A stretch of DNA of 64,000 nt from IMGVR_UViG_3300027782_000025:62001-126000; one strand, 5' to 3'; shown: positions 24,601-62,640, numbered from the stretch's first letter. Numbers and translations are program-made. The notes: generated from the sequence alone by a model not told the origin.

Positions 24601-25628
24601 AAGGCCTCAATAATGTATCTTCTGAGTCTCGGGCTGTAATATGTTATGGTTTTTTTGCCAGCTTCAGCTATCATTTCATCTTGTTCAGCTACCATATCGT
24701 CAACTATCGGCAGGTCGTCATATTCTGACTTTAGCGGCGCCATTTCTATGCGATCGTCATAATTAGACGCCTTTGTATAATCGATGTTAGGTGCTTTAGA
24801 TGCGACTTGTGCTGGTGCAACAGGCTTAACTTGTGCTGGTGCAACAGGCTTAACTGGTGCTGGTGCAACAGGCTTAACTGGTGCTGGCACAGGCGGCACT
24901 GGCTTAACTGGCGTTGGTAAAACAGGTACGGGGGCAACAGACGGAGCAGCTTGGATGACTTCATTATCTATGGTGTCAGCATATTCCTTTTCTGCTTTTA
25001 ATTGCTGTGTCTCTTTATTTTTAAGATTTTCAGCCTTGTCTTTAATCTGTGCGTATCTGTCTTTGACCTCTTTGTCTTGCGGTGTCGCAAGCGTTTTATC
25101 GCTCGGTACCTCTTTAGCTAGCTTTACAGTCTCTATATCGTAGGCTCTTTCTACATTTCTGATGTCTTTGTTAGCATCTACTGCTTGCGGCGCGGCTTTA
25201 AGCTGCGCAGCCCTATGAACCCTAGCTTTCGATGCCTTCTCAGCGTCCTTACTAAGAACACCATATACAGGAAATAAGACGCCAGTCTTGAGATCAGCTA
25301 TATGGTCAGAGTCATATGTTCTATAAGCTTGATCAGAAAATATGTGCGGCAGCGCTCTCGCCCCAAACCTGTACCTTCGCTTTAATCCCCTAATATTACT
25401 TAATTCTGGTAATAATTTTCTTAGATCTAATTGATCCCTTTTACTTATATAATGTAGGTTTATGCCGCCAACTAGTTGATTTCCGGTACTGGGGTGCTTA
25501 TATGTTCCTAAGACAAGCACATCAGGCTTAGGGTCGGTATGATAATTTTCGTAATCGAACTGCCAACGATGCCCTTCGCCAGCTTCGAATATTATATGGC
25601 CTGGAATGGTCAAAGAGTTCAAAATCAT
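24597..25628 (-). CDS. DNA end protector (T4 gp2-like) domain with Pro/Ala-rich tail
   Basis: DPKPDVLVLG...GGINLHYI...AYRTY resembles gp2 'GLNLHYL' family; low-complexity C-half. Confidence 0.55.
   Translation of the reverse strand: MILNSLTIPGHIIFEAGEGHRWQFDYENYHTDPKPDVLVLGTYKHPSTGNQLVGGINLHYISKRDQLDLRKLLPELSNIRGLKRRYRFGARALPHIFSDQAYRTYDSDHIADLKTGVLFPVYGVLSKDAEKASKARVHRAAQLKAAPQAVDANKDIRNVERAYDIETVKLAKEVPSDKTLATPQDKEVKDRYAQIKDKAENLKNKETQQLKAEKEYADTIDNEVIQAAPSVAPVPVLPTPVKPVPPVPAPVKPVAPAPVKPVAPAQVKPVAPAQVASKAPNIDYTKASNYDDRIEMAPLKSEYDDLPIVDDMVAEQDEMIAEAGKKTITYYSPRLRRYIIEAL
24805..24888. repeat. 24-bp tandem repeat x3.5 (KPVAPA[PQ]V)
   Basis: act[tg]gtgctggtgcaacaggctta units. Confidence 0.9.
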
Positions 25629-27577: not shown

Positions 27578-27587
27578 TATATTTAAC
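27578..27587 (-). promoter_or_regulatory. putative late promoter (GTTAAATATT)
   Basis: TAAATA about 27 nt upstream of the 642-aa sigma-like gene. Confidence 0.4.
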
Positions 27588-29939: not shown

Positions 29940-29948
29940 TATATTTAT
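29940..29948 (-). promoter_or_regulatory. putative late promoter (ATAAATATA)
   Basis: TAAATATA about 22 nt upstream of 531-aa gene. Confidence 0.45.
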
Positions 29949-30523: not shown

Positions 30524-30990
30524 TTTGTCTCAGGAATTTTACCCTGAACCTCTATATCTTCAACATTTAAATATTCTATATAGGCTTTGCCTTCGGCAAG
30601 CATATATTCGTATTGTATTTTTCCGTCGAGAAACTTTAGCAACAAATTGTTAATATCGGCATTGTCAGCCAACAAAATCGTTCTTCGCGGATAGGTTAAA
30701 GTATTTCCTGTGAAATATCGTTCGATCGATGCAATATATTCTGTATTTTCATCCCTTATGACAGCGCTGGGAAAATTAATAACTAAAAATTCCATCAGCT
30801 TTTCTTTTAAACCAGCAACTTCTATATCGGGCAATAATTCTACCATTATCCTTGCATTATTACTGCAGCTCTTAGATGCTCTGAATTTTTCGATAAAGAC
30901 ACCGTAGAGATTTTCGTCGGTTTCTTTTAACCATTGCTGCCAGAGTGGATGAGATGCTAAAGAACAATATAGCTCAGTTTTTATTTTCAT
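30481..30990 (-). CDS. hypothetical protein
   Basis: 169 aa, ATGA-coupled to fibre gene. Confidence 0.6.
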   Translation of the reverse strand: MKIKTELYCSLASHPLWQQWLKETDENLYGVFIEKFRASKSCSNNARIMVELLPDIEVAGLKEKLMEFLVINFPSAVIRDENTEYIASIERYFTGNTLTYPRRTILLADNADINNLLLKFLDGKIQYEYMLAEGKAYIEYLNVEDIEVQGKIPETKWLLKRIPKKPIRD

Positions 30991-36900: not shown

Positions 36901-37781
36901 AAATTTACATAATAGGCTGGCTGCATAGCATTACTGCCACCATTTAAGCAACCGGTGAATTCGATGCTATTATTCGCAGGGACATTGGTGGCGACATTTG
37001 CAGCAACGCCGACAGCAACGCCGTCAGTCACCAAAATAAGTGGGCTTTCATTTCTGGTTACAAAAAAATCGCTGGCTGATGAATCGAGTTTACCTAGACT
37101 CTTACGAGTTAGCAAGACGCTATAATCATTTGGTTTAGTAGGATCATCAACGACTTCTAAATCTGTAATTATAAGCTTAGAGTTAGGGTTTTGAGATACT
37201 ACAAATCTCTCTGATGACAAAGCTAATTTCGTTAATGGAGCAGCACCTTTAGCACCCTTGGTGCCTTGTGGGCCAGATAAAATCGAATTTTCGCCAGGGA
37301 TACCAGATTCACCCTGTTCACCACGATCACCGACTTTGCCTGTCAGATTTAACCTACCATAACTCTGAAGATAAGCTAATAAAATGTCCTTTCTGAATTC
37401 AAAGTCAAAGCCATAAGTATTTTCTTGTATTTTATATGGTTCTGAGGTGCTGTCTAGGAGAGGCGTAACATATGACACATCACCATGTATTTCGATAAAT
37501 CTATCTGAGCGCAATTCTAGAAAACCGCTCGAAAAGGAAGAAGTACAATGCTGACCGATGATTGTAGATCTTGGGAATGGGTATACCAACCTATTAAGCT
37601 TTTTAAAATCTAAAGCCGACATAGCCCCATCTCTATAGATCGTAGCTAATTCTAAAATCTTCGTTTCAGACAACAGCTCGTTCCAAGTCCGCATTCTAGA
37701 ATCATATTGATAAATAATGCCTGGCTCGAGCTCATATATCTGCCCGTTGGTGGGATTGTCTGGAAATTTGTTATTGTTCAT
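30987..37781 (-). CDS. large tail fibre / receptor-binding protein with collagen repeat, PT linkers and Asp-box beta-propeller
   Basis: FPDNPTNGQ N-terminus, GAMSALDFKKL motif, (GXY)n, PT-rich linkers, multiple S-x-D-G-x-x-[WF] Asp-boxes; ATG 37781 overlaps upstream stop (track start 37796). Confidence 0.75.
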   Translation of the reverse strand: MNNNKFPDNPTNGQIYELEPGIIYQYDSRMRTWNELLSETKILELATIYRDGAMSALDFKKLNRLVYPFPRSTIIGQHCTSSFSSGFLELRSDRFIEIHGDVSYVTPLLDSTSEPYKIQENTYGFDFEFRKDILLAYLQSYGRLNLTGKVGDRGEQGESGIPGENSILSGPQGTKGAKGAAPLTKLALSSERFVVSQNPNSKLIITDLEVVDDPTKPNDYSVLLTRKSLGKLDSSASDFFVTRNESPLILVTDGVAVGVAANVATNVPANNSIEFTGCLNGGSNAMQPAYYVNLNLITDPIKNLYDRKVEYLRSSYESVVEFWLVTMSNLFEKQKQALCCALQYVESATRNIDTRKHIESVAAAATAGGAKVIMHGRDSNEAAFASGTTLLSTLDAPNHTAAGAPDICSDGKPFPQYPAPTPGNSTPTPTTPTPATPTPTTPTPATTLNCFTDWPAGTELIGSGCIVRGMTSKAVTNASNTVFWLSGKTGIPQTKSVFYEVGAVTSSFKVGEYVTISGGLSSLQGMYVLVGKTTSGLNTYHEIICLPVATPTPSVTPAATPTATPTATPTATPTASFKCPTTASAIDFKIKLPLDEEFQRTLSEFRYEGGKFWVAIKTINTKYPGDLSFAKAYVASSADGKNWLLSKPLDGFPIQTNSPDVIGTAFSSLIAVSPTHLGQKLEVMVVFNNSYDFGKNNNNTSPWARKKAAFYYSSDGGATFGQLYPQGDVDTQNIFDAFSLTCSDYVQLGSSVNGVLTFTASVRYPPYYSGKMPQPPLQSDGTPCGKGAMNFPWGVHAIIQFSRFDSTDPKIPTKFISRYVNSSGKPIAYDSSEFCKFGQQPSYLDSMLGWNGISGWSPFSDLSFSTKYDYAKFVKPGNSMLEAKTASGVMVNLSVIGVEQGGCNPQTNGMGICALCVGTDAAYIVYLANYTPPSTLTAIPFPSVNASLATGSQYLGFTGLFDRGQRFPSASWVIGYLAPDGTGLLVYSDSDYASKKLKTSALGLSTSTSTQLSISSTFNSTSGALPIGMSVQTANLGSLVPSIPITCGSKWDTYRMPRLFNYVDLAYGQNKFFAIGVGDTKEQYVVSSSDAINWVGASSQRYSLRPRPNGKIGLVVGPDRVLYFGYSMKVINSVEQLDTFGVIYSLDSGANFTFRKLDGIDDNAELIQDAKYGNKIYVAAAYSYNPTKEVPPRTRILTSNDGITYLDNDSAIFNFDCRLNFCNGEFLIIPTKTITGVKSVGYRSGNGVNYIEFKLPSDSIPPYGKGEFYDIVCGDGVYLLLASNGAYISKDLNSWSLSLAFAFDVYERVKLNLSYGNGVFIIVGDIDVIVSPDGGGSWERFFLPDFAQTIAYGVDTNNVGKFLITAYSKTGTYDIYVNACSLRSVQVAAGNTMTMAPMLSSSSSVTLNKVTIAAPPSSGLFLTYPLYSGQNINAYLDEPFTLGPFNLLAVGYPNGTVLVGIIDDVGKTLSTAFPTSSLAVTFVTPNTFSFNLTPTVAGDFVLNVFVTNDADGSLSQILPIKVSITRSTVPKILEALPSVPKYSKNARLPHNDPVFELVSNRSTFDLTGIFGDVQTKPSWPPADNDPRLVAPGKYTFDIGFTGNVPENLTGRQLTFDLAYAIFPQMDGLERYWIDLRDRCKADGGQFNMYQDARTGSQEYRSNFPNANSSNIVSCAELLKLKGKLLSRELYRIVDDNDAVRYPFNGNEGYYFNEETISVSNIREAVKKSIGKSFPDTSPISYIEFQPTMDLKTGKQNPGLPSIVVPGFRLNVAGQLFPTNDLGLKLIVNKVSSALGFSSAKDQTGSFFSAERMIIGCNSSYSPNPVNQPAAGVYYTARYLDSSLNPPNYINDNIDATLETSMVTAVAPFDTGTRSAQTKISALAKPNECSPGVMGRATMAISDLVDLLNSPTCNSPLFKATADILPVYFFSANGALGGVINTANAGRKAALDSSYLSAQLNAAISMSSTSASFNNCFGLNFNKLSATNATLACADGTIPIAKFYASLLSTDSLNRWGYSFKYSTNAFIPAYKNITVASSTNNFRAIATNKLISGVTIKDANYETVSSIEVNVKTNANEDTAITLNLPTNQYRVKIDNMSSRIDGYYRADIRVLYQYNSKAIVKSLLSEGSFKSLADAANRYKNKYVEFMHDGGDIRVWIPSKNPKNSSGKISISIERADSYKDKVIILAAVDLQKLDLSKSTKIENEIGDVYLIIDAEKATGITGTLIAMPSIDGKTVMLPSVSSFRFMMKDFYLGQVGVYWLIL
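36445..36504. repeat. 30-bp tandem repeat x2 (PTPTTPTPAT linker)
   Basis: gtagctggcgttgg[ct]gtcgtcggcgtaggg twice. Confidence 0.85.
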
Positions 37782-39259
37782 GTTAAATAAAACCAATTCT
37801 TATTATTTAGTGTAACCACTCTTGAATTAGTAACAGCAATACTACTTCCACCCTGCGTTGGTGGCACGGCCCCACGCGTCCCGCGTGGTGATGGCGGCGG
37901 CGGCGGCGGATCTACAACCGGTGTAGGTGTCAATGGCGTGGGTGTAGGCGTCGGAACATAGGGCGGCGGTACTACGGGTGTAGGCGGTGGGGCTGGAGGA
38001 AATATAGGCGTCGGTGTCGTCGGCGGCTCTGGTGGTTGAAGCGGCGTTGGTGTGCCAGTAGAAGTAGGTGTAGGCGTTGGTTTTGGCGGTACTGGCGGAG
38101 GGTCTGGAAACTGCGTAGCAGAACCGCAAGCAAAAGTTAAACAAAAATCTTGTGCTGGTAAAGCAAATTCAGCATCGCTCAGTTTCTGCGATAGATCTGC
38201 TAAGATCTTGCGAGCCTGATTATCAATGCTAGTTATATATTCCTTAGCTCTGGCACCTAATTCTGCATCAATTTTATTTAAACTCGCCTGATATTCGCTA
38301 ACCACCGCTTTGATATAATCTGATAATGTTAAACTAGAATCGAATTGGACAGGTACATCACTAGAATCTGTAGATCCAGTTGGTAATCGTAGTACAGTTA
38401 AATCAAGCCTTGTAAAATCTCCCGCTGGTTGCTGAAGCTGCCAATCGCTTAGTTTAACTTCATTACAATCTCTAGCATCCGCAGGATAACGCAGATACCT
38501 TTGTAATAAAGAGGCTGACAGCCTATTCGCGGCTCCATTTTGGATATCTAGTTCACTCTTTGTAAAGATCATCTGGTGCCCGCCGCCTTCAAACCCAAGC
38601 AGATTCAAGTCAACAATAGCACTATCAGATAATTCATTAGGTAAGTCATGATATAATATGCCATTGAGATTATAAATAGTCTTCCCGTTGAGTCCTATTC
38701 TTCCATCTACCCCTAGCGGACCTAGGTAATCAAAACCGTGTTTCCCTGGTGGCCCCTCTAGGCCTTTGGGTCCGGTGTCGCCTTTAGACCCTGGTAGATC
38801 AATCGTCAAAGAGTTTAGAAAATTATCGCTTAACGAAAAGTTTAATGCCGGCGGTGTCGGTCCATCAGGAACCAGTATAGCTTTTGATGGCGAACAGTTC
38901 GCAGTGTCTGGTGTCCTGCCGACTGGTGTAAAAACTGAACATGTTATATCGATAGAATCACTAACTAATGTTATATTCCCAGATATTGTGCCGTCGGCGC
39001 CAATGCCAGTTAGACCCGCTTTTGGATCTACTATGATCGAAAAACTACCAGGCGTATCGGTTTGTATAGTATCTATAAAGGCTTTGTCAATTTTGTTGAG
39101 ATAGCCGATTATTTCAGACGAAGCTACTTCAGGCGACTGAGCGACACCTTGACGTTCCCATAGATCATTTGATTTATTATAAACCCATCTAGTATCTCTA
39201 GAATAGTCAATAAATACTTGACCATCATACGGGTATTGTGGTAATAAATTATCAACCAT
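37778..39259 (-). CDS. collagen-repeat tail fibre protein, paralog of N-terminus of the adjacent large fibre
   Basis: LPQYPYDGQVF start, GSKGDTGPKGLEGPPG collagen, Pro/Thr-rich C-terminus. Confidence 0.7.
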   Translation of the reverse strand: MVDNLLPQYPYDGQVFIDYSRDTRWVYNKSNDLWERQGVAQSPEVASSEIIGYLNKIDKAFIDTIQTDTPGSFSIIVDPKAGLTGIGADGTISGNITLVSDSIDITCSVFTPVGRTPDTANCSPSKAILVPDGPTPPALNFSLSDNFLNSLTIDLPGSKGDTGPKGLEGPPGKHGFDYLGPLGVDGRIGLNGKTIYNLNGILYHDLPNELSDSAIVDLNLLGFEGGGHQMIFTKSELDIQNGAANRLSASLLQRYLRYPADARDCNEVKLSDWQLQQPAGDFTRLDLTVLRLPTGSTDSSDVPVQFDSSLTLSDYIKAVVSEYQASLNKIDAELGARAKEYITSIDNQARKILADLSQKLSDAEFALPAQDFCLTFACGSATQFPDPPPVPPKPTPTPTSTGTPTPLQPPEPPTTPTPIFPPAPPPTPVVPPPYVPTPTPTPLTPTPVVDPPPPPPSPRGTRGAVPPTQGGSSIAVTNSRVVTLNNKNWFYLT

Positions 39260-39453: not shown

Positions 39454-39855
39454 CTATTTATTCTCTGTTATTACACGATCCGACAATTTATTTTCGATGA
39501 AATATCCTATTATCAGCAGCGGAATTTGCTCCAATATTCTCCTATCGACTAGTACTCTTTTTCTAGTCATATTAATATAAACCTTATGTCGAATTAGTCT
39601 TTTATATCTTCTAAAATATGTTCCGTGAATGTTTTGTTCAAACGTACTTCTTCGTAAAGCATCATAGAAATCACAAGCATCATCCATATCATGGTATTGG
39701 ATGAGATATTTAACAATATTAACTAGAGTTTCATAAATAGTTTTTATAGGCCAATTTCTGTCGATTTCTGATAGCTTTTCTGCCAACGGATATAGGTATT
39801 TCGGTGTGTCTTCATATCTTATGTCTGGTTTTTCCGACGGAATAATATTTATCAT
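39454..39855 (-). CDS. hypothetical helical protein
   Basis: ATG 39855 or 39876; overlaps NTase 3' end. Confidence 0.55.
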   Translation of the reverse strand: MINIIPSEKPDIRYEDTPKYLYPLAEKLSEIDRNWPIKTIYETLVNIVKYLIQYHDMDDACDFYDALRRSTFEQNIHGTYFRRYKRLIRHKVYINMTRKRVLVDRRILEQIPLLIIGYFIENKLSDRVITENK

Positions 39856-40501
39856 ATAATTTATCACCAATCTCATACATTTTTGTTATGTATCCATTAG
39901 CCCTTAGTTTTTTATATGTAAGATTTTCGGTGCCCATTTCGCCAGAGTTTTCTAAACCACATAGCCTATATCTTGCTACTTTTTCTTGTACACGCTCTAT
40001 GTGCGCCATATTATCTTGGCTGGGTTCCAACTTATAAAGATCATCGATAATCTTTTTGATTTTATAATATTTATACTTTGAAGGTTTTTCGACTCTTTTT
40101 TGAGGGCTAGGGCTTTTTATCCAAGTATCATCTATTAGACTATACACGGCGTTTGCTACTAATTCAGCATCTATATCTTGAAAATAAACTTCTACGTCAT
40201 AATTAAGAACATCGACTTGATGCCTGTCATTCCAAATGGTCTTTATTTGGTTAAGAAAATCCTCTACATATGTCTGCCCAATATCTAATTCATCGAATTT
40301 CACTATGAAGTGAAGGTCAAGATCAGAATGACTGGTATAATTATATCCGGCTAGACTGCCAGTAAATATTATGTCGTTTACTTTATCCTTCGGAATTTTT
40401 GAGTCCCTAAGTATGCGGTGTGATAATTTTAATAGAGCATCTCTAACTTCTCGGCGCAACCGATTATTAACCCATATGTCTGTATTCAATTTAGAATGCA
40501 T
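39812..40501 (-). CDS. Pol-beta superfamily nucleotidyltransferase
   Basis: FTGSLAGYNY...SDLDLH...DVEVY (GS, DxD, third acidic residue). Confidence 0.85.
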   Translation of the reverse strand: MHSKLNTDIWVNNRLRREVRDALLKLSHRILRDSKIPKDKVNDIIFTGSLAGYNYTSHSDLDLHFIVKFDELDIGQTYVEDFLNQIKTIWNDRHQVDVLNYDVEVYFQDIDAELVANAVYSLIDDTWIKSPSPQKRVEKPSKYKYYKIKKIIDDLYKLEPSQDNMAHIERVQEKVARYRLCGLENSGEMGTENLTYKKLRANGYITKMYEIGDKLYDKYYSVGKTRHKI

Positions 40502-40517
40502 TAATAGATCCTCTGAT

Positions 40518-40526
40518 TATATTTAA
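40518..40526 (-). promoter_or_regulatory. putative late promoter (TTAAATATA)
   Basis: TAAATATA ahead of GAGG RBS of NTase gene. Confidence 0.5.
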
Positions 40527-54636: not shown

Positions 54637-57135
54637 TCATGATTTTGGTAAATCATGCTCTGTGATATCAGCACCTTGTGATTCAGTGATCGGATGCCCT
54701 TTAGCTCTCATCAATATGTCATAATTTTCCTTAATGACTTCATCCCTGATAGCTTTAGGCACTGACCATTCTACTAATAAATCATTATCTTGGTTTGGAT
54801 CATGAATTATATTAGTCATTGGTTTTGGTTGGTTTCTAGAAAGACCATCCAATTCCTTTGATTCTATTAAATATTCATATTTAGTGTTCAAAGTCTTTGT
54901 ATCGTCATAACTAAATCCGCGCCTCTCATGTATCTTTTCTAAATATGTTCTAACCCTTCCTGACACTTCTTTGCGCTTCATTTCGTTAATCAGCTTTTTA
55001 TGAGCCTTGGCGTCAAAGCCGCCCTCACCAAGCGGCGGTAAACCTCCAGCGTCAGCACCACCAGGAGGAGCACCTGCGTCAGCACCACCAGGAGGAGCAC
55101 CTGCGTCAGCACCACCAACAGGAGGAGCGCCACCTTCAGCACCTTCTGGTGGCGCACCGCCTTCTGGAGGAGCATCACCAGCGCCTTCTAAACCACCCAT
55201 AGCACCGCCGCCGCCGCCACCGCCACCGCCACCGCCACCTCCGCCTTCTTCACCACCTTCTTCGCTTTCAGGAGACTTACTAAGCATTTCTAAATCTTTT
55301 AATTCTTGAATTTCGTCAGGAGTTAGATCGGTAAAATGGGTAACGATCCATTCTTTTGGGAACCAGCCAAGATCTTTAAGATCAGACATTACACCTACTC
55401 TTGTTCTCCAAGATTCGATCCTATATAATTCTTCCATGGCACTAGTAGCGGTAAGTGCTATTTCGAAGCCTTTAAGATCTTCAACAGAAAAACCTTTAAG
55501 TGCTAAATGGACAATAGCCACCTTTGTTAAGCCGTTTGCCACTTCTCTCTGAATATACTGAACGGCTTTAGCGAACTCGCTATGGCTCTGTGATAAGGAT
55601 TTTTCGCTTGACTCTCCAGCACCTTCCCCGATACCTACCCTAGCAAATGGTATTTTCATAGGCGCTACCATCTTCTTTTTAAAATATTCGATATCTGCTA
55701 TTTTATCGACATTTTCACCGCCTTGTAGTATTTCAACATCAGGGCCAGTGCCGTCGCTACGTCTAGGCAGAAAATAATCATCTTCTTGAATTAGAGGACT
55801 ATATCGTTCATCAAAAGAGCCGGTGGTAGGGTTATAAAACCTCTGCCTCTTAAAATTCCTAGCAATCATCTGCATATATTCTGGAACTTCTTTGGGCGGT
55901 ATCATTCCAACAGGTATTATAAACTTGCGTCGTTCCGGTGCTCTTGTGATCCTATAAATCAAAGCGGCATCTTCCATCAACCGCAATTGCTTAAACGCCT
56001 TCCTACCGCCATCTAGTATTGACTTGCCGTAGGGGGCATAAAAGTTTTCAAAATTAGTTAATCGGAGATGCATAACTTGCCAAGGATGCAAGAATATGGG
56101 CTTTGGCCACATGCTATCCATGTGAAAGAATCCAATTAGATCACCATAACGGGTCTCGATCCTTGTGAAGTTATACACATTCATAAACTTAAGAGCCGCT
56201 ACCGATGTGCGGTCAGCGTCAAGCGTTATCTCAAACGGCATATCACCGTACTTGCACAGATACCTAATTGTAGGCCGGCAAAGAGTATCCCAATTTAAGG
56301 TATTATAAAACAGGCTTTCGAGTTCCCGCTTTAGGCGGATCGAACGTGCTCTAATAATTAAAGTGTGTTTACGCTCAGGGTCTACCAAGCTATTATGTAC
56401 TATCAGAAAATTAGGGCCTGTCCCGACAGCAAAGTTATGATGCTCAGGAACCTCTATATCGTATACTTTATCTGCCTTCCCAGCAACTTCTACGGCTTTC
56501 ACTACCTTCTCACCATCTTCTTCGGTCGGTGCATCGATGGGTGTACCGGTTATATCTGCATTAATTATAGTAAAAGAACGTATCCGCTGCCCCGCCTTTA
56601 ATTCAGATGCTCTAACATATTCATCTGTCTCAGTTAAGTAAAGATGCTCAGCAGTATTCGTTATGATGGTGCCATCTTCGAAGATAACTCTAATAGTATC
56701 AACATCAATGCCAGTGACTCTGGCGCCCTTAGCGACAGCTGGAACGAATTTCTGGTTGGCGATATCATACGCTATGACGATGAACTCATGCTCGCTACCG
56801 GCCTGAGCCAATTTTTCTATCGTGATCGTAGATCCATTAACTAATAATATTGGAGTACTACCCACTAAACAGGCTTCATCTGCATATAGATCGAGAGCTA
56901 AGCTTATTTCGCCGGTTTGATCCATCTGCTCATAGTCTTTATATCTCTCTAGGCGATTTATCTGAAGATTTGTTTGGTCTAAAATAGCGGCTTGCTGGTT
57001 AAAATCTAAAAAATCACCACCGGATGTCAATCTATCGAGGTTAGTCTGATCTTGAAAGATCCTTTCCGACTGATATATTCTATTCTGCCTTGTCAGGGCT
57101 CGTAATCTATCGAAAATTAACCAATTGCTAGCCAT
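54637..57135 (-). CDS. portal protein (T4 gp20-like), intein-containing
   Basis: ISLALDLYADE, LCKYGD, PYGKSIL, QLRLMEDAALIYRITRAPERR, EDDYFLPRR, DIEYFKKK; ATG 57135 with GGAG RBS (track 57147). Confidence 0.95.
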   Translation of the reverse strand: MASNWLIFDRLRALTRQNRIYQSERIFQDQTNLDRLTSGGDFLDFNQQAAILDQTNLQINRLERYKDYEQMDQTGEISLALDLYADEACLVGSTPILLVNGSTITIEKLAQAGSEHEFIVIAYDIANQKFVPAVAKGARVTGIDVDTIRVIFEDGTIITNTAEHLYLTETDEYVRASELKAGQRIRSFTIINADITGTPIDAPTEEDGEKVVKAVEVAGKADKVYDIEVPEHHNFAVGTGPNFLIVHNSLVDPERKHTLIIRARSIRLKRELESLFYNTLNWDTLCRPTIRYLCKYGDMPFEITLDADRTSVAALKFMNVYNFTRIETRYGDLIGFFHMDSMWPKPIFLHPWQVMHLRLTNFENFYAPYGKSILDGGRKAFKQLRLMEDAALIYRITRAPERRKFIIPVGMIPPKEVPEYMQMIARNFKRQRFYNPTTGSFDERYSPLIQEDDYFLPRRSDGTGPDVEILQGGENVDKIADIEYFKKKMVAPMKIPFARVGIGEGAGESSEKSLSQSHSEFAKAVQYIQREVANGLTKVAIVHLALKGFSVEDLKGFEIALTATSAMEELYRIESWRTRVGVMSDLKDLGWFPKEWIVTHFTDLTPDEIQELKDLEMLSKSPESEEGGEEGGGGGGGGGGGGGGAMGGLEGAGDAPPEGGAPPEGAEGGAPPVGGADAGAPPGGADAGAPPGGADAGGLPPLGEGGFDAKAHKKLINEMKRKEVSGRVRTYLEKIHERRGFSYDDTKTLNTKYEYLIESKELDGLSRNQPKPMTNIIHDPNQDNDLLVEWSVPKAIRDEVIKENYDILMRAKGHPITESQGADITEHDLPKS
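55049..55117. repeat. 27-bp tandem repeat (GAPPGGADA) in portal tail
   Basis: gcgtcagcaccaccaggaggagcacct x2.5; adjacent poly-Gly. Confidence 0.85.
56392..56871 (-). mobile_element. mini-intein (160 aa, no homing endonuclease) in portal
   Basis: starts CLVGSTPI (block A), TAEHLY (block B TxxH), VYDIEV..HHNF (block F), ends VHN followed by Ser. Confidence 0.95.
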
Positions 57136-57158
57136 ATGCCGCTCCAAGCCCTAAAATA

Positions 57159-57171
57159 AATATATTTACAA
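57159..57171 (-). promoter_or_regulatory. putative late promoter of portal/head operon (TTGTAAATATATT)
   Basis: identical 13-mer at 9791-9803; T4-late-like. Confidence 0.6.
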
Positions 57172-57253: not shown

Positions 57254-59224
57254 TTATTTTCTCTTTTGTCTATAAAATTTAGGAGGCGTAACCAAAGGTC
57301 TACCTCCTACGGAAGGTATAGCTCCAAGCTGATATGTAAATTGATCAAGAACACGCTGAGCTGCTATTTCTGGCAAATCGATTGGCTCCATGCTCATTGG
57401 TATTAACAAGCTCGATCCGCCTTTTTCAATAAACGACTGCTGGTCGACTACACGTTGTTCATCAGTCAATATGGTCGGGCCAACCATCGATCTAAAATCA
57501 GTATTGTGATTAGCTGGTGAGACGATTCCACCATCGTCGATAAAAGCGTCGCTAGTACCGATGAAGGCAAGAGCTGTTGCAATTACTAGATCGTCGAAGT
57601 TGCCTGCACCGTCTTCTGCCTCAGTTTTAGATGTATCCCGCCCTGACTTGTCTCTTTTTCGAACATACGTCTGAAATTGCTTCAGTAACCTCTGAGAATA
57701 AACCCTATATCCTGAGTCATCCTCTCTAATATAATCGATCAGAAATTTATTCATTGTTGGCTTACTAGAAGCAGTTGTCGCATAACCATATGGCGCCACT
57801 TTTAAGGCTCTAGGCCGGCGCTTTTTACCACCTGCTTGTGGCTTATCATTAATGTCTTTACGGCGCCATAATCTGGGATACATAAAATCATGACGCAATG
57901 CATCGATGATAATATCTCCACCATTATTTCGCTCTATAACCGCTAGGGCGTTGTTATAATATCGTCCAATCCTGTCGATATATTTTGCTAATTCCCTCGG
58001 TAATACTCTTGCCATAAATTCAGCAGCTTGCTCCCTGGTGTCGAGATCGAACACCTCTATGGTACTATAATCCCTGCCTTTACCAGTTGCTATATCGACA
58101 CCCATTACATATCGATGAGCTGGTTTGCTTTCTTCCAGTATGATCTTGCCTCTTCGTCTCTCAGGAGACCGGTTTATTGGTTTATGCCATATCCAAAAAC
58201 CCTGATCAGGGTCGATGAAAGAAAAATCAAGCTCGCTAACGACATTATTGGTCGGATGTGTGAAGGTCTGAAGACCATTGACTTTTTCTACAGGCGGTTT
58301 AATCGTTAGAGCAACTGCAGCAAGAGCGTTTTTATCAAGCACGGTGTTACCTGAGCCGATAAAGGCCGCCAATACTTCCTGTTCAAATTTCCAGCCTTCC
58401 CCCTGCTCTTGCAAAGCTTGCCATTGTTCTTCGAGCCAAGGTGACCAATATGGACCATATTTTGATATTTCGGCTTTCCCTGAACATTGACGTAGATTGT
58501 CCCTCGGAGCTATACGCTTCTTATCTAATGATAGCGGGTCAGTATATTCTATAGACCAGTCCATATCCCACCAATTTATAATAATCGGATTAAATGGACT
58601 AACTCCAGCTTCTGCATCTGTCCATGCGCTCCAGTACCAATTACCAACACCATTGCTAGTGCTAATGCAAATAACCGAACCCCCGTGCTGCAAGGTCGGC
58701 CAACCTGCTGCCCATAGGACATCCATATTAGGGATAAACGCGGCCTCATCGATAATATTTAAGGATGCCGCATGGGATCTTAACACTTCTGGATGCGAAG
58801 TAAGAGACTGAATCTTGGAGCCGTTAGGAAAGAATACTTCATGCTCATTTTGCTTCGTAGGAGTCCAGATCTCGCGCATCCAAGGAGGTAAGTTGTTAAA
58901 CAAAAAATAAATATGCTCGCGCAAGAAGGACATTGCATCTTCATTACGTCTTGAGACTATCAAAATGGTCTTATGAGCATTAAACATGGCAAACCAGAGA
59001 GCGAAAGCTCCGGATATCTTTGAGACACCCGCTTGGCGACATTTTCTGAATATGTTAAGTCGGTTTTTTCTAAAGCATGTCAGAGCATGTAACTGGTATT
59101 TAAATGGATCGAAAGGAATAACACCAGCCGAGGGATGCTTAATCTTTCCGAAATTACGCAAAAACCAAGCTACGGATTTTTGGCAACGTTTAATAACTTC
59201 TAATTTAGCTTGTTCTGGCGTCAT
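57254..59224 (-). CDS. terminase large subunit (T4 gp17-like)
   Basis: FKYQ, KCRQAGVS (Walker A), IIDEAAF (Walker B), ISTSNG, YVMGVDIATG, IERN, FDDLVIA. Confidence 0.96.
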   Translation of the reverse strand: MTPEQAKLEVIKRCQKSVAWFLRNFGKIKHPSAGVIPFDPFKYQLHALTCFRKNRLNIFRKCRQAGVSKISGAFALWFAMFNAHKTILIVSRRNEDAMSFLREHIYFLFNNLPPWMREIWTPTKQNEHEVFFPNGSKIQSLTSHPEVLRSHAASLNIIDEAAFIPNMDVLWAAGWPTLQHGGSVICISTSNGVGNWYWSAWTDAEAGVSPFNPIIINWWDMDWSIEYTDPLSLDKKRIAPRDNLRQCSGKAEISKYGPYWSPWLEEQWQALQEQGEGWKFEQEVLAAFIGSGNTVLDKNALAAVALTIKPPVEKVNGLQTFTHPTNNVVSELDFSFIDPDQGFWIWHKPINRSPERRRGKIILEESKPAHRYVMGVDIATGKGRDYSTIEVFDLDTREQAAEFMARVLPRELAKYIDRIGRYYNNALAVIERNNGGDIIIDALRHDFMYPRLWRRKDINDKPQAGGKKRRPRALKVAPYGYATTASSKPTMNKFLIDYIREDDSGYRVYSQRLLKQFQTYVRKRDKSGRDTSKTEAEDGAGNFDDLVIATALAFIGTSDAFIDDGGIVSPANHNTDFRSMVGPTILTDEQRVVDQQSFIEKGGSSLLIPMSMEPIDLPEIAAQRVLDQFTYQLGAIPSVGGRPLVTPPKFYRQKRK

Positions 59225-59718
59225 ATGTCATCATTTTCGCCTAGTGGTTGGCTTAAAATTCTTTCTAGCATGTTCGAATCAATTCCAGCGCTAACAGTAT
59301 TTTGCTGAATATTGATGCTAGACTTGGTAGCGGCCAAAGTTTTAGCGTTAGCTTCGATCATTTTAACGGCCGTAGTATTAATATTCGACTTTACTTCGAT
59401 CGCCTTTACAAGCGATTCAATTATACCAGTAGACAATTTAGAGCCTGTTCCGATAGCACTTTCTACTTGATCGCGCAACATGTTTATAAGATCTTGAGTT
59501 TCAGCCCGATCTGCCTTGCATGCCTTTAAAACATCATCAGTAACATCATCTAACCTACGCAAGTATTTGGTTATATCGACAGCTTCTGGTTCAACGCTTG
59601 CGTTATTAGGATTTAATGTAGATATAACATGTGGGGCTACATTGGCTAAGTCTAGTGTAGAGGGAACTTGGTCGCTGGCCTTGTCTAAATCTCTAAATAA
59701 ATCATTTAGTTCTGTCAT
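59221..59718 (-). CDS. putative terminase small subunit
   Basis: 165 aa helical protein directly upstream of and coupled to TerL; 'NIQQNTV' C-terminal strand. Confidence 0.55.
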   Translation of the reverse strand: MTELNDLFRDLDKASDQVPSTLDLANVAPHVISTLNPNNASVEPEAVDITKYLRRLDDVTDDVLKACKADRAETQDLINMLRDQVESAIGTGSKLSTGIIESLVKAIEVKSNINTTAVKMIEANAKTLAATKSSINIQQNTVSAGIDSNMLERILSQPLGENDDI

Positions 59719-60151
59719 CCGATTTTTCCTCGGCGTTTTTATCTATCAACGACACTGATAAATTAGAAGATGCTAACTTTTCATGCAATTCTGTCACAGT
59801 AATCTTCTGGTCATCTATCAATTTTAACAATTTATCGAGTTTACCTTCAGTATGGACAGTATTGGCTTTTTTGCGTTGTGTCCTTGTGCTCTTTTTATGT
59901 GCTTGCTTGGTAGCTCCATGACTCATTTGGTCAATGGGCTTTTTTTTGGGGTGCACTCTTCCAGCAAGATCAAATGGCTTTACCCTGCTATGTCCAGTCG
60001 GATTATCGATCCTGTTCTTTTTGCCGACTCTAGTTCGTCTGCGTACTCTTTCTATAACTGAGCCGCCCATAGATTCAGCTATAAAACTATTAAATTCTTC
60101 CAAGGTTAATGACTGATCAGCGATTTTTTCTACTATTAGATCGTATTTCAT
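59702..60151 (-). CDS. basic hypothetical protein
   Basis: 149 aa; LIVE / FIAES sites then Arg/Lys-rich core. Confidence 0.6.
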   Translation of the reverse strand: MKYDLIVEKIADQSLTLEEFNSFIAESMGGSVIERVRRRTRVGKKNRIDNPTGHSRVKPFDLAGRVHPKKKPIDQMSHGATKQAHKKSTRTQRKKANTVHTEGKLDKLLKLIDDQKITVTELHEKLASSNLSVSLIDKNAEEKSDDRTK

Positions 60152-60152
60152 T

Positions 60153-61106
60153 TTACTCTTCCTCTTCGTCGAGTATTACTTTTTTGCGCTCAAGGGAGTT
60201 ATTGGTGGACCCTCGGTTTATTGGCGAATCGGTAAATTCTGTGCTTCTTAATTTGAGTAATTTTAAAAAACCAGTAATTATAAATCTCGATAATTTAGTT
60301 TTTTCTATCAATTTTCCGACTAAACCATCATGTGGTTTATCATCAGTCCGTATCAATAGATCCAAAGCTTCGATAATAATTATATGTTCTTCATTATATT
60401 GGCATATGTTCTTGGCTTCTCCGAGAAATCTAGCCATAACGTCGTTTTGAGTTTTAGTCTTGGTGCCGACATGATTCAAATAGGCATCACTATTCTTCCT
60501 ATCACGTCCCTCTTTTTTGATGTATGCCAATATGACTGTTCTCGCTACTTGCGACCACATATTGAATACTTTACTTGCGCCTTTATATAATATAGTGGTA
60601 GAGCCACCAAATAATCCTTGCTTCGGCTCAATGATCGGTGCTTCTGAAAAGGTCGAGCTGCATACTTTACACTTTTTGATGAGCTTAACTGTTTCTTCTA
60701 ATCTAAGTATACCATATTCTAATTGGCTTGGCGAATACAAAATTGAATCGCTTGGTCTGTCCGGATTGTAGCATCTACGGCAATGCGGCCTAGCTTTATA
60801 TTTATATAGTACTTTTTCGACTTGGCACCAAGCGGTGTTGACAAGATCTCCCATGGAGGAGTCTTCCTGGCCTGGATAGATCATATGGAGGCCTTGCTTC
60901 CTGATGATCTGCCTGATTAATTCTGAGGCGTTGGACATAATAGCATCGCGTAGACTAACATCAGTACATCCTGTCCAAATGTACTTGGTTAAATTCCATT
61001 CTACTATTTCATTTATAAAATATAAGCGTTTAGGTACTTCAGAGGCATCACTTACCAAATAATGCGCTGGGCACTTTAAATCTGGATCTGATGAGTTCGC
61101 TTCCAT
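60153..61106 (-). CDS. gp55-like late sigma factor with zinc-ribbon insertion
   Basis: YFINE..., GDLVNTAWCQVEKVLYKY, SKVFNMWSQVARTVILAYIKKE; position after UvsW-like helicase; CRRC/CKVC; true start may be downstream of 61106. Confidence 0.6.
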   Translation of the reverse strand: MEANSSDPDLKCPAHYLVSDASEVPKRLYFINEIVEWNLTKYIWTGCTDVSLRDAIMSNASELIRQIIRKQGLHMIYPGQEDSSMGDLVNTAWCQVEKVLYKYKARPHCRRCYNPDRPSDSILYSPSQLEYGILRLEETVKLIKKCKVCSSTFSEAPIIEPKQGLFGGSTTILYKGASKVFNMWSQVARTVILAYIKKEGRDRKNSDAYLNHVGTKTKTQNDVMARFLGEAKNICQYNEEHIIIIEALDLLIRTDDKPHDGLVGKLIEKTKLSRFIITGFLKLLKLRSTEFTDSPINRGSTNNSLERKKVILDEEEE

Positions 61107-62640
61107 CTAGTACACCATTCGGAAAGATCACGGTAGACGGATAGCCTATGTGATCTATTATCTTCAACCTTGCTTTAGAGTGGTTATATAGGTATTTGTT
61201 ATTTCGAAAATAAAAATCATATATAACACTCTTTCCGCGTTTATTTAGCCGCAAGGCTCGACCTATTTTTTGCTCGAAATCCGATTGTAATTTACCACCA
61301 GTAGCCACAATCAACCTCTCGCATCCGCCTTTTAAATCCAAACCCCGATTGATTATTTTTCCACCGATAAGAATCTGGAACTTCCTATCCTCAAAGTCCC
61401 TAATTACTTCCCTGCGTGTATTCTTATCAGTCTTACCGAAAATAAAATGTGCTGGATAACCAGCACTATTAAACAATTCGAGCAAACTACGGCCAAGAAC
61501 CTCTCTATCTACTAAAATTAGTACTCCATCACCTTCTGGTAATTTATTAGTAGCTATACGATATATTAAGGAATGAAAATCGGCGTTTTCAACCATAAAA
61601 TCATTTATAGCTATATCATAGGCCGTCGACTCCTTGATATCGCCCAGACCGCCGACACAAAACATCTTGTACTCACAAGGAATAATCCTTCCAAGGCTGG
61701 TTAATAAAGCCCTGTCGACTCTGTGAATAATCGACCCTAGATGCTCCTGCACCACCAAAGCTTCAACCGGCTTAGAAGGATCAGTAGGAGTACCACTAAA
61801 ACCATATCTTCTACGGCCATGAAAGTGATTCCTAAAAAGATTTTTATATGATTCACTGCAAGCCTTGTCGCATTCATCGACTAGTAACATTTCAGCTTTA
61901 TGAATATAATCTAATAATTCATTAGCATTCGCCTTGCGGGTCTCGAATGCTTTAAGCTGATTCTCGAACCTATTGTAACGCTTGGTATATTGGTGTTCAT
62001 CCTCGCCTTTAAGATGCTTGGGCGGTACCGGTGCCGCTTTAGGCGGTGTAAGAGACTGTATCGAACCTACGACAATAGTCTGACCATTCGGCTTATGCCC
62101 AGCATAAAACATCCCTACTTCGTCCTTAATATCTCGTAACAATAAACGTGATCGCGCCTGTTCTACAACAATTGTCTGATCAGCCAGAATGACCGTAGGG
62201 CAGTCGAAGATCTTGCAAATCGCACACGCCACTTCTGTCTTACCGGCGCCAGTTGGTAAAGCAATGATCCCACATTCATTGGTAATCGCTTCTTTTATCG
62301 AAGTCAGCTGGTATTCTTCAAGGGTAATATCTGGTAACATGTCAGGCGTGACGATATCAACAGTCGGTACAGGGTATCTCCAAGCATCTCTTGCATCGGT
62401 TATAGAAAGCGGTAAATTATGCTTCTTACACACTTCGATCACTAGAGCCAACAATGGCCTAGCGATTTTCTTTCTTGAACGATTATATTTTCTATAGACA
62501 CCATCCCATTGCCCTCGCTGGTTAGGATCTATGTAGGTCCCAGGCCTTGAGACGCTGAAAGCCTCCCATAGAACATTATCTTCATGCTGGGTGATGTTTT
62601 CAAAATAAACAAAATTATTGTCGCGTATGATTGCATTCAT
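61048..62640 (-). CDS. uvsW: SF2 DNA helicase (UvsW-like)
   Basis: EYQ, LPTGAGKT, LVDECD, FSGTP, RGLD, QKIGRALR. Confidence 0.88.
   Translation of the reverse strand: MNAIIRDNNFVYFENITQHEDNVLWEAFSVSRPGTYIDPNQRGQWDGVYRKYNRSRKKIARPLLALVIEVCKKHNLPLSITDARDAWRYPVPTVDIVTPDMLPDITLEEYQLTSIKEAITNECGIIALPTGAGKTEVACAICKIFDCPTVILADQTIVVEQARSRLLLRDIKDEVGMFYAGHKPNGQTIVVGSIQSLTPPKAAPVPPKHLKGEDEHQYTKRYNRFENQLKAFETRKANANELLDYIHKAEMLLVDECDKACSESYKNLFRNHFHGRRRYGFSGTPTDPSKPVEALVVQEHLGSIIHRVDRALLTSLGRIIPCEYKMFCVGGLGDIKESTAYDIAINDFMVENADFHSLIYRIATNKLPEGDGVLILVDREVLGRSLLELFNSAGYPAHFIFGKTDKNTRREVIRDFEDRKFQILIGGKIINRGLDLKGGCERLIVATGGKLQSDFEQKIGRALRLNKRGKSVIYDFYFRNNKYLYNHSKARLKIIDHIGYPSTVIFPNGVLDGSELIRSRFKVPSALFGK

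What the first reader, a model, noticed from the sequence alone, without database searches (positions are those of the whole stretch)
60153..61106. gp55-like late sigma factor interrupted by a zinc ribbon
Seen: segments resembling gp55/sigma region 2 (GDLVNTAWCQVEKVLYKY and SKVFNMWSQVARTVILAYIKKE; compare gp55-family NPFAYFTQI...AF...I.KEK). They are separated by ~70 aa containing CRRC (60771-60782) and CKVC (60660-60671). Established: uvsW next to gp55 is common in T4-like cyanophages, and T4 gp55 has no such Zn module. Inference: a late sigma with an inserted metal-binding domain near the -10 recognition surface that may replace a co-activator or alter promoter reading.
Basis: partly seen in the sequence, partly recalled or inferred. 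Interest (0 to 1): 0.62.

Follow-up and report, generated by a model that had tools for sequence, protein, structure and literature searches.

The report
Phage sigma factor with zinc-ribbon insert
An unannotated gene of an uncultured giant phage encodes a T4 gp55-like RNA polymerase sigma factor whose promoter-melting domain carries a conserved four-cysteine zinc-ribbon insertion and an extra C-terminal helix-turn-helix domain, a new variant of a known kind of phage transcription factor.

Summary
ORF 60153..61106 (-) encodes a 317-aa protein with the quoted motifs and two CxxC pairs at the stated coordinates.

It has no Pfam, PHROG or GenBank-phage match. It does have several hundred unnamed relatives on metagenomic phage contigs of up to about 400 kb.

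An AlphaFold model (pLDDT 77) finds T4 gp55 (7d7d_F, Z 9.6) as the best of 48,161 PDB chains. Many sigma region-2 domains follow, at about 2 A rmsd, all skipping residues ~104-177.

Relatives lacking the insert read LYKFDxxPGHxKxFNMWSQ. As a profile they match the gp55 family collinearly (hhalign E 7.7e-5, probability 62%).

The four Cys are invariant in all 40 aligned homologs and present in all 79 IMG/VR loci. The insert sits in the loop equivalent to the ECF-sigma L3 specificity loop, flanked by equivalents of gp55 DNA-pocket residues.

Unlike gp55, the protein has a C-terminal HTH domain (weakly sigma-4-like). No clamp-binding motif, gp33 or gp45 was found.

G(T/C)AAATATA is enriched upstream of genes, equally in phages with and without the insert. 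The insert therefore probably does not set core promoter specificity.

Many relatives carry inteins at W93|C94 and W184|S185.

Verdict: a real sigma factor and a new variant. What the zinc ribbon does is unknown.

The parts
60153..61106 (-). Whole ORF (317 aa plus stop): gp55-like sigma factor with zinc-ribbon insert
   Evidence: About 370 homologs at 55-98% identity. AlphaFold model pLDDT 77.
61026..61106 (-). Residues 1-27: variable N-terminal tail predicted as disordered. It overlaps the 3' end of the helicase gene by 59 nt.
   Evidence: pLDDT below 50. Variable length in homologs.
60798..61025 (-). Residues 28-103: N-terminal half of the sigma region-2-like domain (helices 32-44, 50-71, 84-98). 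Ends in LYKY. Contains invariant N32, D87, W93, Q95, E97 and Y103.
   Evidence: VIA matches to gp55 and to sigma-2 domains. hhalign mapping to gp55 N13, E77 and F86. Invariant columns.
60576..60797 (-). Residues 104-177: zinc-ribbon insertion of about 74 aa. Absent from shorter relatives, from gp55 and from cellular sigma-2 domains.
   Evidence: Insert-less relatives read LYKFDxxPGHxKxFNMWSQ. Sigma-2 structural alignments span model 32..200 with only about 91 aligned residues. Folded alone, the best matches are weak: Z 2.8 overall, rubredoxins Z 2.1-2.4.
60771..60782 (-). First zinc knuckle, C109-R-R-C112
   Evidence: Invariant Cys in 40 of 40 homologs.
60660..60671 (-). Second zinc knuckle, C146-K-V-C149
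   Evidence: Invariant Cys in 40 of 40 homologs.
60462..60575 (-). Residues 178-215: long helix SKVFNMWSQVARTVILAYIKKEGRDRKN (sigma 2.3/2.4 and gp55 H4 equivalent) plus a short following helix
   Evidence: hhalign of relatives maps S185 to gp55 T99, Q186 to Q100 and IKKE to IKKE. Functional roles of the gp55 residues come from PMC7892883. Relatives carry an intein exactly at W184|S185.
60225..60443 (-). Residues 222-294: C-terminal four-helix HTH domain, weakly sigma-4-like. Absent from T4 gp55.
   Evidence: VIA matches: 3mzy Z 6.1, 4g6d Z 5.7, 6ono Z 5.7. Otherwise only weak HTH and homeodomain sequence hits.
60156..60224 (-). Residues 295-317: C-terminal tail predicted as disordered. It follows the conserved EFTDSPxN and ends in an acidic run.
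   Evidence: pLDDT below 50. Conservation of S288, D293 and S294.
61048..62640 (-). UvsW-like helicase immediately upstream. It overlaps the sigma gene and is probably co-transcribed with it.
   Evidence: ResIII and Helicase_C. phrog_16. Collinear BLASTP match to T4 UvsW. Helicase-sigma adjacency recurs in L005, L006 and L007.
57161..57168 (-). TAAATATA copy 14 nt upstream of the portal ORF: candidate promoter element of the type this sigma may read
   Evidence: 14 of 50 genomic copies lie 0-50 nt upstream of a gene start in the sense orientation.
29940..29947 (-). TAAATATA copy 22 nt upstream of ORF 28323..29918
27578..27585 (-). TAAATATA copy 25 nt upstream of ORF 25625..27553
40518..40525 (-). 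TAAATATA copy 17 nt upstream of ORF 39812..40501

Best explanation
The ORF encodes a phage sigma factor of the gp55 type, that is, a minimal sigma built around a region-2-like domain. It belongs to an uncultured giant T4-related phage in which no multisubunit RNA polymerase gene was found.

Shown:
- It has the sigma-2 fold, and gp55 is the closest solved structure.
- A conserved Cys4 zinc-ribbon module of about 74 aa is inserted cleanly between ...LYKYxxRPH and G.SKVFNMWSQ.... This is the loop between the clamp-helix-binding helix and the -10-recognition/melting helix.
- That loop corresponds to gp55 residues 87-94. By my own recollection of the sigma-E sequence, it also corresponds to loop L3 of ECF sigmas.
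- A C-terminal HTH domain follows.

Inferred mechanism:
- The acidic helix 84-98 (D87, E97) docks on the host beta-prime clamp helices.
- N32, Y103, F181, W184, S185 and Q186 form pockets for flipped non-template bases of an 8-bp -10-like element, G(T/C)AAATATA. This element lies about 20-25 nt before the start codons of the portal and other genes and has no -35 partner.
- The C-terminal HTH takes the sigma-4/gp33 place on the beta flap, or contacts upstream DNA.
- The zinc ribbon lies beside the non-template-strand track. It adds a contact, to DNA or to the beta subunit, that stabilises the open complex rather than setting the core motif.
For: Structure:
- VIA-align against 48,161 chains: 7d7d_F is the best hit (Z 9.6, rmsd 5.2 A, 122 of 137 residues aligned, model 29..257). 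That chain is T4 gp55.
- It is followed by sigma-B 8x6g_H (Z 8.6, rmsd 2.2, 91 aa), sigma-70 1sig (Z 7.6, rmsd 1.9) and about 25 further sigma factors.
- The Foldseek PDB top hit is sigma-S 5ipl_F, probability 0.93, E 0.089.
- The BFVD list is dominated by phage sigma factors, all with weak E-values.

Sequence:
- Insert-less relatives (alignment A2) against the gp55 family (alignment A3): hhalign E 7.7e-5, probability 62%, 114 collinear columns over gp55 residues 5-129.
- Functional gp55 residues N13, E77, F86 and T99 (PMC7892883) align to invariant N32, E97, Y103 and S185.

Insertion:
- Shorter relatives lack it.
- The four Cys are invariant.
- Zinc-ribbon-bearing sequences cluster on the tree.
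- Inteins in relatives sit at W93|C94 and W184|S185, marking these motifs as critical.

Context:
- UvsW-like helicase, sigma, then terminase synteny is conserved.
- No RNAP beta match in the genome.
- TAAATATA: 14 of 50 copies lie just upstream of genes, against 6.9% for composition-matched permutations. Related 8-mers are enriched 13-25-fold in 79 related loci.

Complex prediction: with E. coli beta-prime 225-345 the result is weak support only. Score 0.32 (runs 0.57, 0.00, 0.32); best control 0.00; partner pLDDT at least 41; the runs agree in at least 1% of contacts. The mark was reached by 58 of 80 solved complexes and 2 of 110 mismatched pairs.
Against: - No Pfam Sigma70_r2/r4 or PHROG gp55 model matches the protein itself. 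The full-length profile fails against the gp55 family and against PDB sequences.
- The gp55 link rests on a predicted structure and a moderate profile-profile score obtained through relatives.
- Z 9.6 is not far above what helical models reach by chance (note).
- The sigma-4 likeness of the C-terminal domain is weak (Z about 6).
- Timing of expression, RNAP binding, zinc binding and the promoter assignment are all untested.
- The genes downstream of the motif could not be shown to be structural, apart from the portal.
- The genome also encodes at least two conventional sigma-70-like proteins that could read the motif instead.
Confidence: 0.8

Rival explanations
1. It is an ordinary two-domain (ECF-like, sigma-2 plus sigma-4) member of the sigma-70 family that acquired an insert. 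It is not a gp55-type factor. It would read a bipartite -35/-10 promoter, with the C-terminal HTH binding the -35 element.
For: - Collinear structural matches to full-length sigma-32, sigma-28, sigma-S and ECF sigmas cover both domains.
- The C-terminal domain matches sigma-4 structures at Z 5.7-6.1.
- T4 gp55 has no such domain.
Against: - gp55 is the top structural hit, and the only family reached by profile comparison.
- Pfam Sigma70_r2 and r4 do not match, although they do match another sigma in the same genome.
- No -35-like conserved positions appear upstream of the enriched motif.
Confidence: 0.25
2. The zinc ribbon changes promoter specificity: it reads bases, as the ECF L3 loop does. 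Phages whose sigma carries the insert would then use a different late promoter from those whose sigma lacks it.
For: - The insert sits in the loop equivalent to L3, which PMC6372665 describes as a modular determinant of -10 specificity in ECF sigmas.
- It is flanked by residues equivalent to gp55 pocket residues F86 and T99.
Against: - The same upstream 8-mers are enriched to a similar degree in 79 insert-bearing loci and in 25 insert-less loci: AGTAAATA 25x vs 21x, GTAAATAT 18x vs 16x, CAAATATA 15x vs 17x.
- The consensus is the same, G(T/C)AAATATA.
- Subtle flank preferences were not resolvable.
Confidence: 0.15
3. It is not a sigma factor. It is a helical DNA-binding regulator or structural protein with a zinc ribbon, and its resemblance to sigma-2 is a common helical arrangement.
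For: - No sequence model of any sigma family hits the protein directly.
- The aligner's own note says helical models often reach Z 8-13 by chance.
Against: - Nearly all top-20 structural hits are sigma-2 domains, at 2-3 A rmsd over about 90 residues.
- Independent libraries (PDB by Foldseek, BFVD) also return sigma factors.
- Motif-level agreement with gp55 functional residues.
- Conserved position next to a UvsW-like helicase. From memory, gene 55 sits beside uvsW in T4-like cyanophages.
Confidence: 0.07

Closest known systems
Bacteriophage T4 gp55, late-promoter sigma factor (PDB 7D7C/7D7D; PHROG 234)
   Same: - Best structural match (Z 9.6).
- Sigma-R2-like helices followed by a long helix.
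- Collinear profile match through insert-less relatives.
- Equivalents of N13, E77, F86, T99, Q100 and the IKKE motif are conserved.
- The phage apparently relies on host RNAP.
- The candidate promoter is a single A/T-rich 8-mer resembling TATAAATA.
   Different: - 317 aa against 185 aa.
- A Cys4 zinc ribbon of about 74 aa is inserted in the H3-H4 loop.
- An added C-terminal HTH domain.
- No LDFLY-type sliding-clamp-binding motif.
- No gp33 or gp45 homolog found in the partial genome.
- The PHROG 234 model does not match.
- The enriched motif is G(T/C)AAATATA. TATAAATA itself is not enriched (3 of 44 copies upstream).
ECF (group 4) sigma-70-family factors, such as E. coli sigma-E and M. tuberculosis sigma-L
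   Same: - Two-domain layout: a sigma-2-like domain plus a C-terminal HTH.
- Sigma-2 fold at 2-3 A rmsd.
- The insert occupies the loop equivalent to the L3 specificity loop.
   Different: - Pfam Sigma70_r2 and r4 do not match.
- The loop is replaced by a whole zinc-binding domain.
- No -35-like element is seen.
- The linker and C-terminal domain are only weakly sigma-4-like.
Zinc ribbons of TFIIB/TFB and rubredoxin-like knuckle domains
   Same: - Two CxxC knuckles on beta-hairpins.
- Located in a transcription initiation factor.
- Weak structural likeness to rubredoxins (Z 2.1-2.4).
   Different: - No significant structural or sequence match to any specific zinc-ribbon family.
- It is inserted inside a sigma-2 domain rather than placed at the N-terminus.
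- About 33 residues separate the knuckles, and about 26 conserved residues follow the second knuckle.

Membership tests
T4 gp55 late sigma family (PHROG 234) | Sigma-R2-homology fold (helices H1-H4) | tested here: met
   7d7d_F (gp55) is the top hit of 48,161 chains: Z 9.6, 122 of 137 residues aligned.
T4 gp55 late sigma family (PHROG 234) | Match to the family's sequence model | tested here: not met
   - phrog_234 does not match the protein or the genome.
- The full-length profile fails against the gp55 alignment.
- Only insert-less relatives reach the family: hhalign E 7.7e-5, probability 62%. Two of 16 hit phrog_234 at E 0.024.
T4 gp55 late sigma family (PHROG 234) | Conserved DNA-pocket and clamp-helix-contact residues (N13, E77, F86, T99) | tested here: met
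   They align to N32, E97, Y103 and S185, all invariant in 40 homologs. Roles of the gp55 residues are from PMC7892883. The alignment goes through relatives, not the protein itself.
T4 gp55 late sigma family (PHROG 234) | Extended H4 plus H5 helix-loop-helix | tested here: inconclusive
   The model has a long helix 180-204 and a short helix 207-214. The gp55 alignment extends to gp55 residue 141, but at an overall rmsd of 5.2 A.
T4 gp55 late sigma family (PHROG 234) | C-terminal sliding-clamp-binding motif, and dependence on gp45 and gp33 | tested here: not met
   - The tail reads EFTDSPxN...acidic, with no LDFL-type motif.
- PF02916 (gp45) and phrog_254 (gp33) are absent from the 274-kb record.
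- The record is only about 70% complete.
Sigma-70 family (Pfam Sigma70_r2, Sigma70_r4) | Match to the region 2 and region 4 sequence models | tested here: not met
   No hit at E up to 10. The PF04542 genome scan hits other ORFs, not this one. C-terminal segments give only weak generic HTH hits.
Sigma-70 family (Pfam Sigma70_r2, Sigma70_r4) | Sigma-2 fold | tested here: met
   8x6g_H Z 8.6, rmsd 2.2, 91 aa. 1sig Z 7.6, rmsd 1.9. 4x8k, 3ugo and others.
Sigma-70 family (Pfam Sigma70_r2, Sigma70_r4) | Sigma-4 domain that binds the beta flap and the -35 element | tested here: inconclusive
   Z 5.7-6.1 to sigma-4 structures, which is within the range of chance for small helical domains. No -35-like conserved positions.
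Sigma-70 family (Pfam Sigma70_r2, Sigma70_r4) | Binding to the RNAP beta-prime clamp helices | tested here: inconclusive
   Complex prediction with E. coli beta-prime 225-345 gives weak support: score 0.32, best control 0.00. The host is unknown.
Zinc ribbon / rubredoxin-like zinc knuckle domains | Two CxxC knuckles conserved across the family | tested here: met
   Four Cys invariant in 40 of 40 homologs. Two CxxC pairs in 79 of 79 loci.
Zinc ribbon / rubredoxin-like zinc knuckle domains | Knuckles on beta-hairpins forming the ribbon fold | tested here: inconclusive
   Strands are predicted around both knuckles. The best structural matches are weak: Z 2.8 overall, rubredoxins Z 2.1-2.4.
Zinc ribbon / rubredoxin-like zinc knuckle domains | Metal binding | not testable with these tools
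   Needs metal analysis of purified protein.

The most novel reading that the evidence does not exclude
The family is a self-sufficient, single-chain late sigma. It joins in one polypeptide a gp55-type melting domain, a zinc ribbon that clamps the non-template strand or bridges to the beta subunit, and a flap-binding HTH that does the job of gp33 or sigma-4. Late transcription in this widespread clade of giant aquatic phages would then need neither a sliding clamp nor a co-activator. The zinc ribbon would be a bacterial-virus counterpart of the zinc ribbons that archaeal and eukaryotic initiation factors use.
Probability: 0.15. Interest if true: 0.75.

Novelty: new variant of a known kind. Interest (0 to 1): 0.58.

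Why it matters
gp55-type sigmas are the minimal promoter-melting factors known. In T4 they work only with a co-activator and the replication clamp.

This is a large, highly conserved and entirely unannotated family from giant uncultured phages. It keeps the gp55 core but adds a metal-binding domain in the loop that sets -10 specificity in ECF sigmas, and a second HTH domain.

The family offers a natural experiment: relatives exist with the insert, with a shorter insert, and without it. That lets one ask how sigma-2 domains can be elaborated and how late transcription can be uncoupled from replication.

It also gives an annotation for several hundred hypothetical proteins and a candidate late promoter for this phage clade. 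The recurrent inteins at two Trp-containing motifs independently mark the residues most likely to be essential.

Tried and rejected
1. Direct sequence annotation gave nothing. Tried: Pfam, PHROGs, a PDB profile search with the full-length family, and tblastn against 50,697 GenBank phages with the protein and with two insert-less relatives.

2. hhalign of the full-length family against a single gp55 sequence and against the gp55 family failed (probability below 1%). The insert and the low diversity of that alignment are the likely cause. Only the insert-less relatives gave a signal.

3. A gp55-gp33 fusion. The C-terminal domain looked like gp33 by eye, but hhalign against gp33 alone and against a 19-sequence gp33 alignment gave probabilities of 1.2% and 0.6%. 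Rejected.

4. The downstream 149-aa ORF as a gp33-like co-activator: hhalign probability 0.3%. Rejected.

5. A specific family for the zinc ribbon. The domain folded alone finds nothing above Z 2.8 and no Foldseek match.

6. Showing that genes behind the TAAATATA motif are structural. Of the ten proteins scanned, seven had no PHROG match and three gave only uninformative hits (two families of unknown function and one weak ABC-transporter match). The portal, identified earlier, is the only motif-bearing gene known to be structural.

7. Flank analysis of the motif with a loose core (NAA[AT]ATA) was swamped by noise. The stricter core showed no -35-like element and no clear difference between insert-bearing and insert-less groups.

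8. Complex prediction with the E. coli beta-prime clamp helices gave only weak support: score 0.32 against controls at 0.00. It is not used as a main argument.

9. The protein-atlas feature search gave only sub-threshold leads. A viral Sigma70_r2 cluster appeared at rank 22, score 0.81.

10. The literature searches found no description of a zinc-ribbon-bearing gp55 or of inteins in sigma factors. This is an absence in an open-access library, not proof of novelty.

Sequencing-run and read tools were not used.

Full report
**1. The observation**

ORF 60153..61106 on the minus strand is open for 317 codons.
- The two quoted motifs are residues 86-103 and 178-199.
- The CRRC and CKVC motifs are residues 109-112 and 146-149.
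- The ORF overlaps the end of an upstream helicase gene by 59 nt. The next ORF follows at once, so it sits in a tightly packed minus-strand gene block: RNR, helicase, this gene, two small ORFs, large terminase, then an intein-bearing T4-type portal.
- The plus-strand ORFs across the region are short and have no support.

**2. Where it comes from**

The window is part of a 274,625-bp IMG/VR virus record, estimated 70% complete. That implies a phage of roughly 390 kb.
- GC content is 40%.
- The terminase is at most about 29% identical to anything among 50,697 GenBank phages. The best hits are two uncultured phages of 484 and 595 kb.
- No RNAP beta-subunit domain is found in the record. The phage therefore probably uses host RNA polymerase.

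**3. Sequence searches**

Pfam, PHROGs and tblastn against GenBank phages give nothing for the protein.
- The word search finds 370 relatives, all unnamed or 'hypothetical', at 55-98% identity, on contigs of up to about 400 kb.
- In an alignment of 40 of them the mean column identity is 60%. The four Cys are invariant, and so is most of SKVFNxWSQ..RTV.LA.IKK.GRD. That is a very high level of constraint for a phage protein.

**4. Structure**

The AlphaFold model (pLDDT 77; above 88 across residues 100-200) shows, in order:
- three helices;
- a beta-rich segment holding both CxxC pairs;
- a long helix;
- a disordered linker;
- a four-helix C-terminal domain;
- a disordered tail.

An exhaustive structural comparison with 48,161 PDB chains ranks 7d7d_F first (Z 9.6, 122 of 137 residues aligned). 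A sequence look-up confirms that this chain is T4 gp55. Next come sigma region-2 domains of sigma-B, sigma-32, sigma-28, sigma-E, sigma-70, sigma-S, sigma-A and others.
- Several align at 1.9-3 A rmsd over about 90 residues.
- Those alignments run from model residue ~32 to ~200, so they skip about 75 residues in the middle.

Foldseek against the PDB puts sigma-S first (probability 0.93, E 0.089). The viral BFVD library returns mostly phage sigma factors, including annotated gp55 proteins, all with weak E-values. The C-terminal domain matches sigma-4 structures at Z 5.7-6.1. That is suggestive but within chance range. By sequence it gives only weak generic HTH or homeodomain hits.

**5. The insertion is real**

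A profile search of 1.84 billion representatives found 116 clusters.

Among them are proteins of 185-300 aa that read LYKFDxxPGHxKxFNMWSQ. The two halves of the window protein are joined there by a short loop, with no Cys.
- Others carry a shorter CxxC...CxxC insert (P0221).
- Others carry a non-Cys insert at the same place (P0209, P0166, P0176).

In IMG/VR:
- all 79 loci found with the long form have two CxxC pairs;
- 25 loci have no insert;
- 7 loci have a shorter zinc ribbon.

On a tree built with the insert removed, 40 of 42 zinc-ribbon rows fall in one group nested among insert-less rows. The trait is clustered (0 of 500 shuffles as low), although well-supported branches still force at least two changes, and deep long branches are unreliable. 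gp55 and cellular sigmas lack the insert, so gain is the parsimonious direction.

**6. The link to gp55 by sequence**

The insert-less relatives, as a profile, match a 22-sequence gp55 alignment with hhalign E 7.7e-5 and probability 62%. The match is collinear over gp55 residues 5-129.

The cryo-EM paper on T4 late transcription (PMC7892883) assigns these roles:
- E70, D74 and E77 contact the beta-prime clamp helices.
- N13, F86, H95, Y97 and T99 line the pockets that hold flipped non-template bases at -12, -9 and -8.
- R114 contacts the template strand.

In the alignment N13, E77, F86, T99 and Q100 correspond to N32, E97, Y103, S185 and Q186 of the window protein. All are invariant. IKKE aligns with IKKE.

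The zinc ribbon is therefore inserted in the loop equivalent to gp55 residues 87-94, between pocket residues. Lin et al. (PMC6372665) describe the ECF-sigma loop L3 as a modular determinant of -10 specificity. That L3 is the same loop rests on my own recollection of the sigma-E sequence.

**7. Differences from gp55**
- The family has a C-terminal HTH domain that gp55 lacks.
- Its tail carries a conserved EFTDSPxN followed by an acidic end, rather than the LDFLY-type clamp-binding motif.
- No gp45 or gp33 homolog was found in the partial genome.
- The idea that the C-terminal domain is a fused gp33 was tested and rejected. So was the idea that the next ORF is gp33-like.

**8. The zinc ribbon itself**

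Folded alone (pLDDT 75) it has strands at both knuckles and two short helices. Its best matches are weak: Z 2.8 overall, with rubredoxins at Z 2.1-2.4 and an MCM zinc finger at 2.2. Foldseek gives nothing.

It is a two-knuckle, zinc-ribbon-like module without a close solved relative. Its own conservation is high: 70% mean identity, with invariant R110, P118, S121, Y131, I133, Q163 and G168. This argues for a specific contact surface rather than a mere structural staple.

**9. Candidate promoter**

TAAATATA occurs 50 times in the genome.
- 14 copies lie 0-50 nt upstream of a gene start in the sense orientation.
- That is the highest share among all 56 permutations of the same letters (mean 6.9%).
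- One of these copies lies 14 nt upstream of the portal ORF.
- The T4 motif TATAAATA is not enriched (3 of 44 copies).

Pooled related loci show AGTAAATA, GTAAATAT, CAAATATA and CAAAAATA enriched 13-25-fold upstream of genes. The enrichment is nearly the same in the 79 insert-bearing and the 25 insert-less loci. The consensus is G(T/C)AAATATA, about 22-26 nt before the start codon, with no -35-like positions.

This fits a gp55-like single-element promoter. It argues against the insert setting the core motif. Which of the phage's sigma-like proteins reads it is not shown.

**10. Other evidence**
- A complex prediction of residues 28-215 with E. coli beta-prime 225-345 gave weak support only. 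Score 0.32 (runs 0.57, 0.00, 0.32), best control 0.00, partner pLDDT at least 41, run agreement at least 1% of contacts. The mark was reached by 58 of 80 solved complexes and 2 of 110 mismatched pairs.
- The helicase-sigma-terminase order recurs in a 62%-identical relative. The helicase-sigma adjacency also recurs in an insert-less relative, with a T4-type portal nearby.
- The helicase aligns end to end with T4 UvsW.

**11. Inteins**

About 39 of the 116 representative clusters are 400-1200 aa long because they carry inteins. Pfam Intein_splicing and LAGLIDADG_3 were confirmed in most of seven examples.
- There are two sites: after W93 (...AW|C...HN|CQ...) and after W184 (...FNMW|C...SHN|SQ...).
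- At least two proteins carry both.
- Inteins usually sit in essential, conserved sites. The second site is immediately before the residue equivalent to gp55 T99.

**12. Conclusion**

The protein is a sigma factor of the gp55 kind carrying a conserved zinc-ribbon insertion and an added HTH domain.
- Strict membership of the gp55 family fails on the sequence model, the size and the clamp-binding motif. I therefore file it as a new variant of a known kind, not as a member.
- The function of the insert is unknown. My best guess is an extra contact that stabilises the open complex (low confidence). A role in core promoter specificity is disfavoured.

Noticed in passing
Relatives P0123-P0201 (representative clusters); sites correspond to window residues W93|C94 (about 60825/60826) and W184|S185 (about 60552/60553): About a third of the representative clusters of this sigma family carry LAGLIDADG-type inteins at one or both of two sites, each directly after a conserved Trp. 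The window's own copy is intein-free. I found no report of inteins in sigma factors in the searchable literature.
   Followed up: partly
window 9826..10740 (+): A 304-aa ORF containing KFDYTKGYKLSTYF, a near-canonical sigma-70 region 2.2-2.3 motif. The Pfam Sigma70_r2 match is weak (E 0.05). It is probably a second, conventional sigma factor of the phage.
   Followed up: partly
G000:C1:17431-18153 (+), outside the window (L002:1381-2103): A 240-aa ORF with a clear Sigma70_r4 match (E 1.6e-10) and a KFSTYF region-2 motif. It is a third sigma-like gene in the same phage, suggesting a cascade of several sigma factors.
   Followed up: partly
window 54637..57147 (-): The T4-type portal protein (836 aa) carries an intein (Intein_splicing, residues 102-252). 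In the relative L005 the large terminase carries an intein with a LAGLIDADG domain instead. Inteins appear rife in this phage clade.
   Followed up: no
window 59702..60151 (-) and 59221..59718 (-): Two small ORFs (149 and 165 aa) lie between the sigma gene and the terminase, with no informative family match. Counterparts occupy the same position in L005; the first of them shares T.E[DE]FN...R.RRRT with the window's 149-aa ORF. They could be a small terminase subunit or DNA-binding partners. The gp33 likeness of the first was tested and rejected.
   Followed up: partly
window 60797..60804 (-): One TAAATATA copy lies inside the sigma ORF itself. It encodes part of the conserved LYKYK (codons TAT AAA TAT AAA). 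It lies 646 nt upstream of the next start, so it is probably a coding coincidence, not a promoter.
   Followed up: yes
Pooled loci L019-L130, upstream regions: A second family of 8-mers, GTATTT[GAC]A, is enriched about 12-18-fold upstream of genes in both insert-bearing and insert-less phages. In at least one case in the genome it lies directly upstream of TAAATATA (GTATTTCTGTAAATATA at G000 position 46936). It may be an extended promoter element or a separate promoter class.
   Followed up: no
G000:C1:187408-200664 (+) and 255774-267539 (+), outside the window; window 30987..37796 (-): Very large ORFs (4418, 3921 and 2269 aa) in this phage genome. They were not examined.
   Followed up: no
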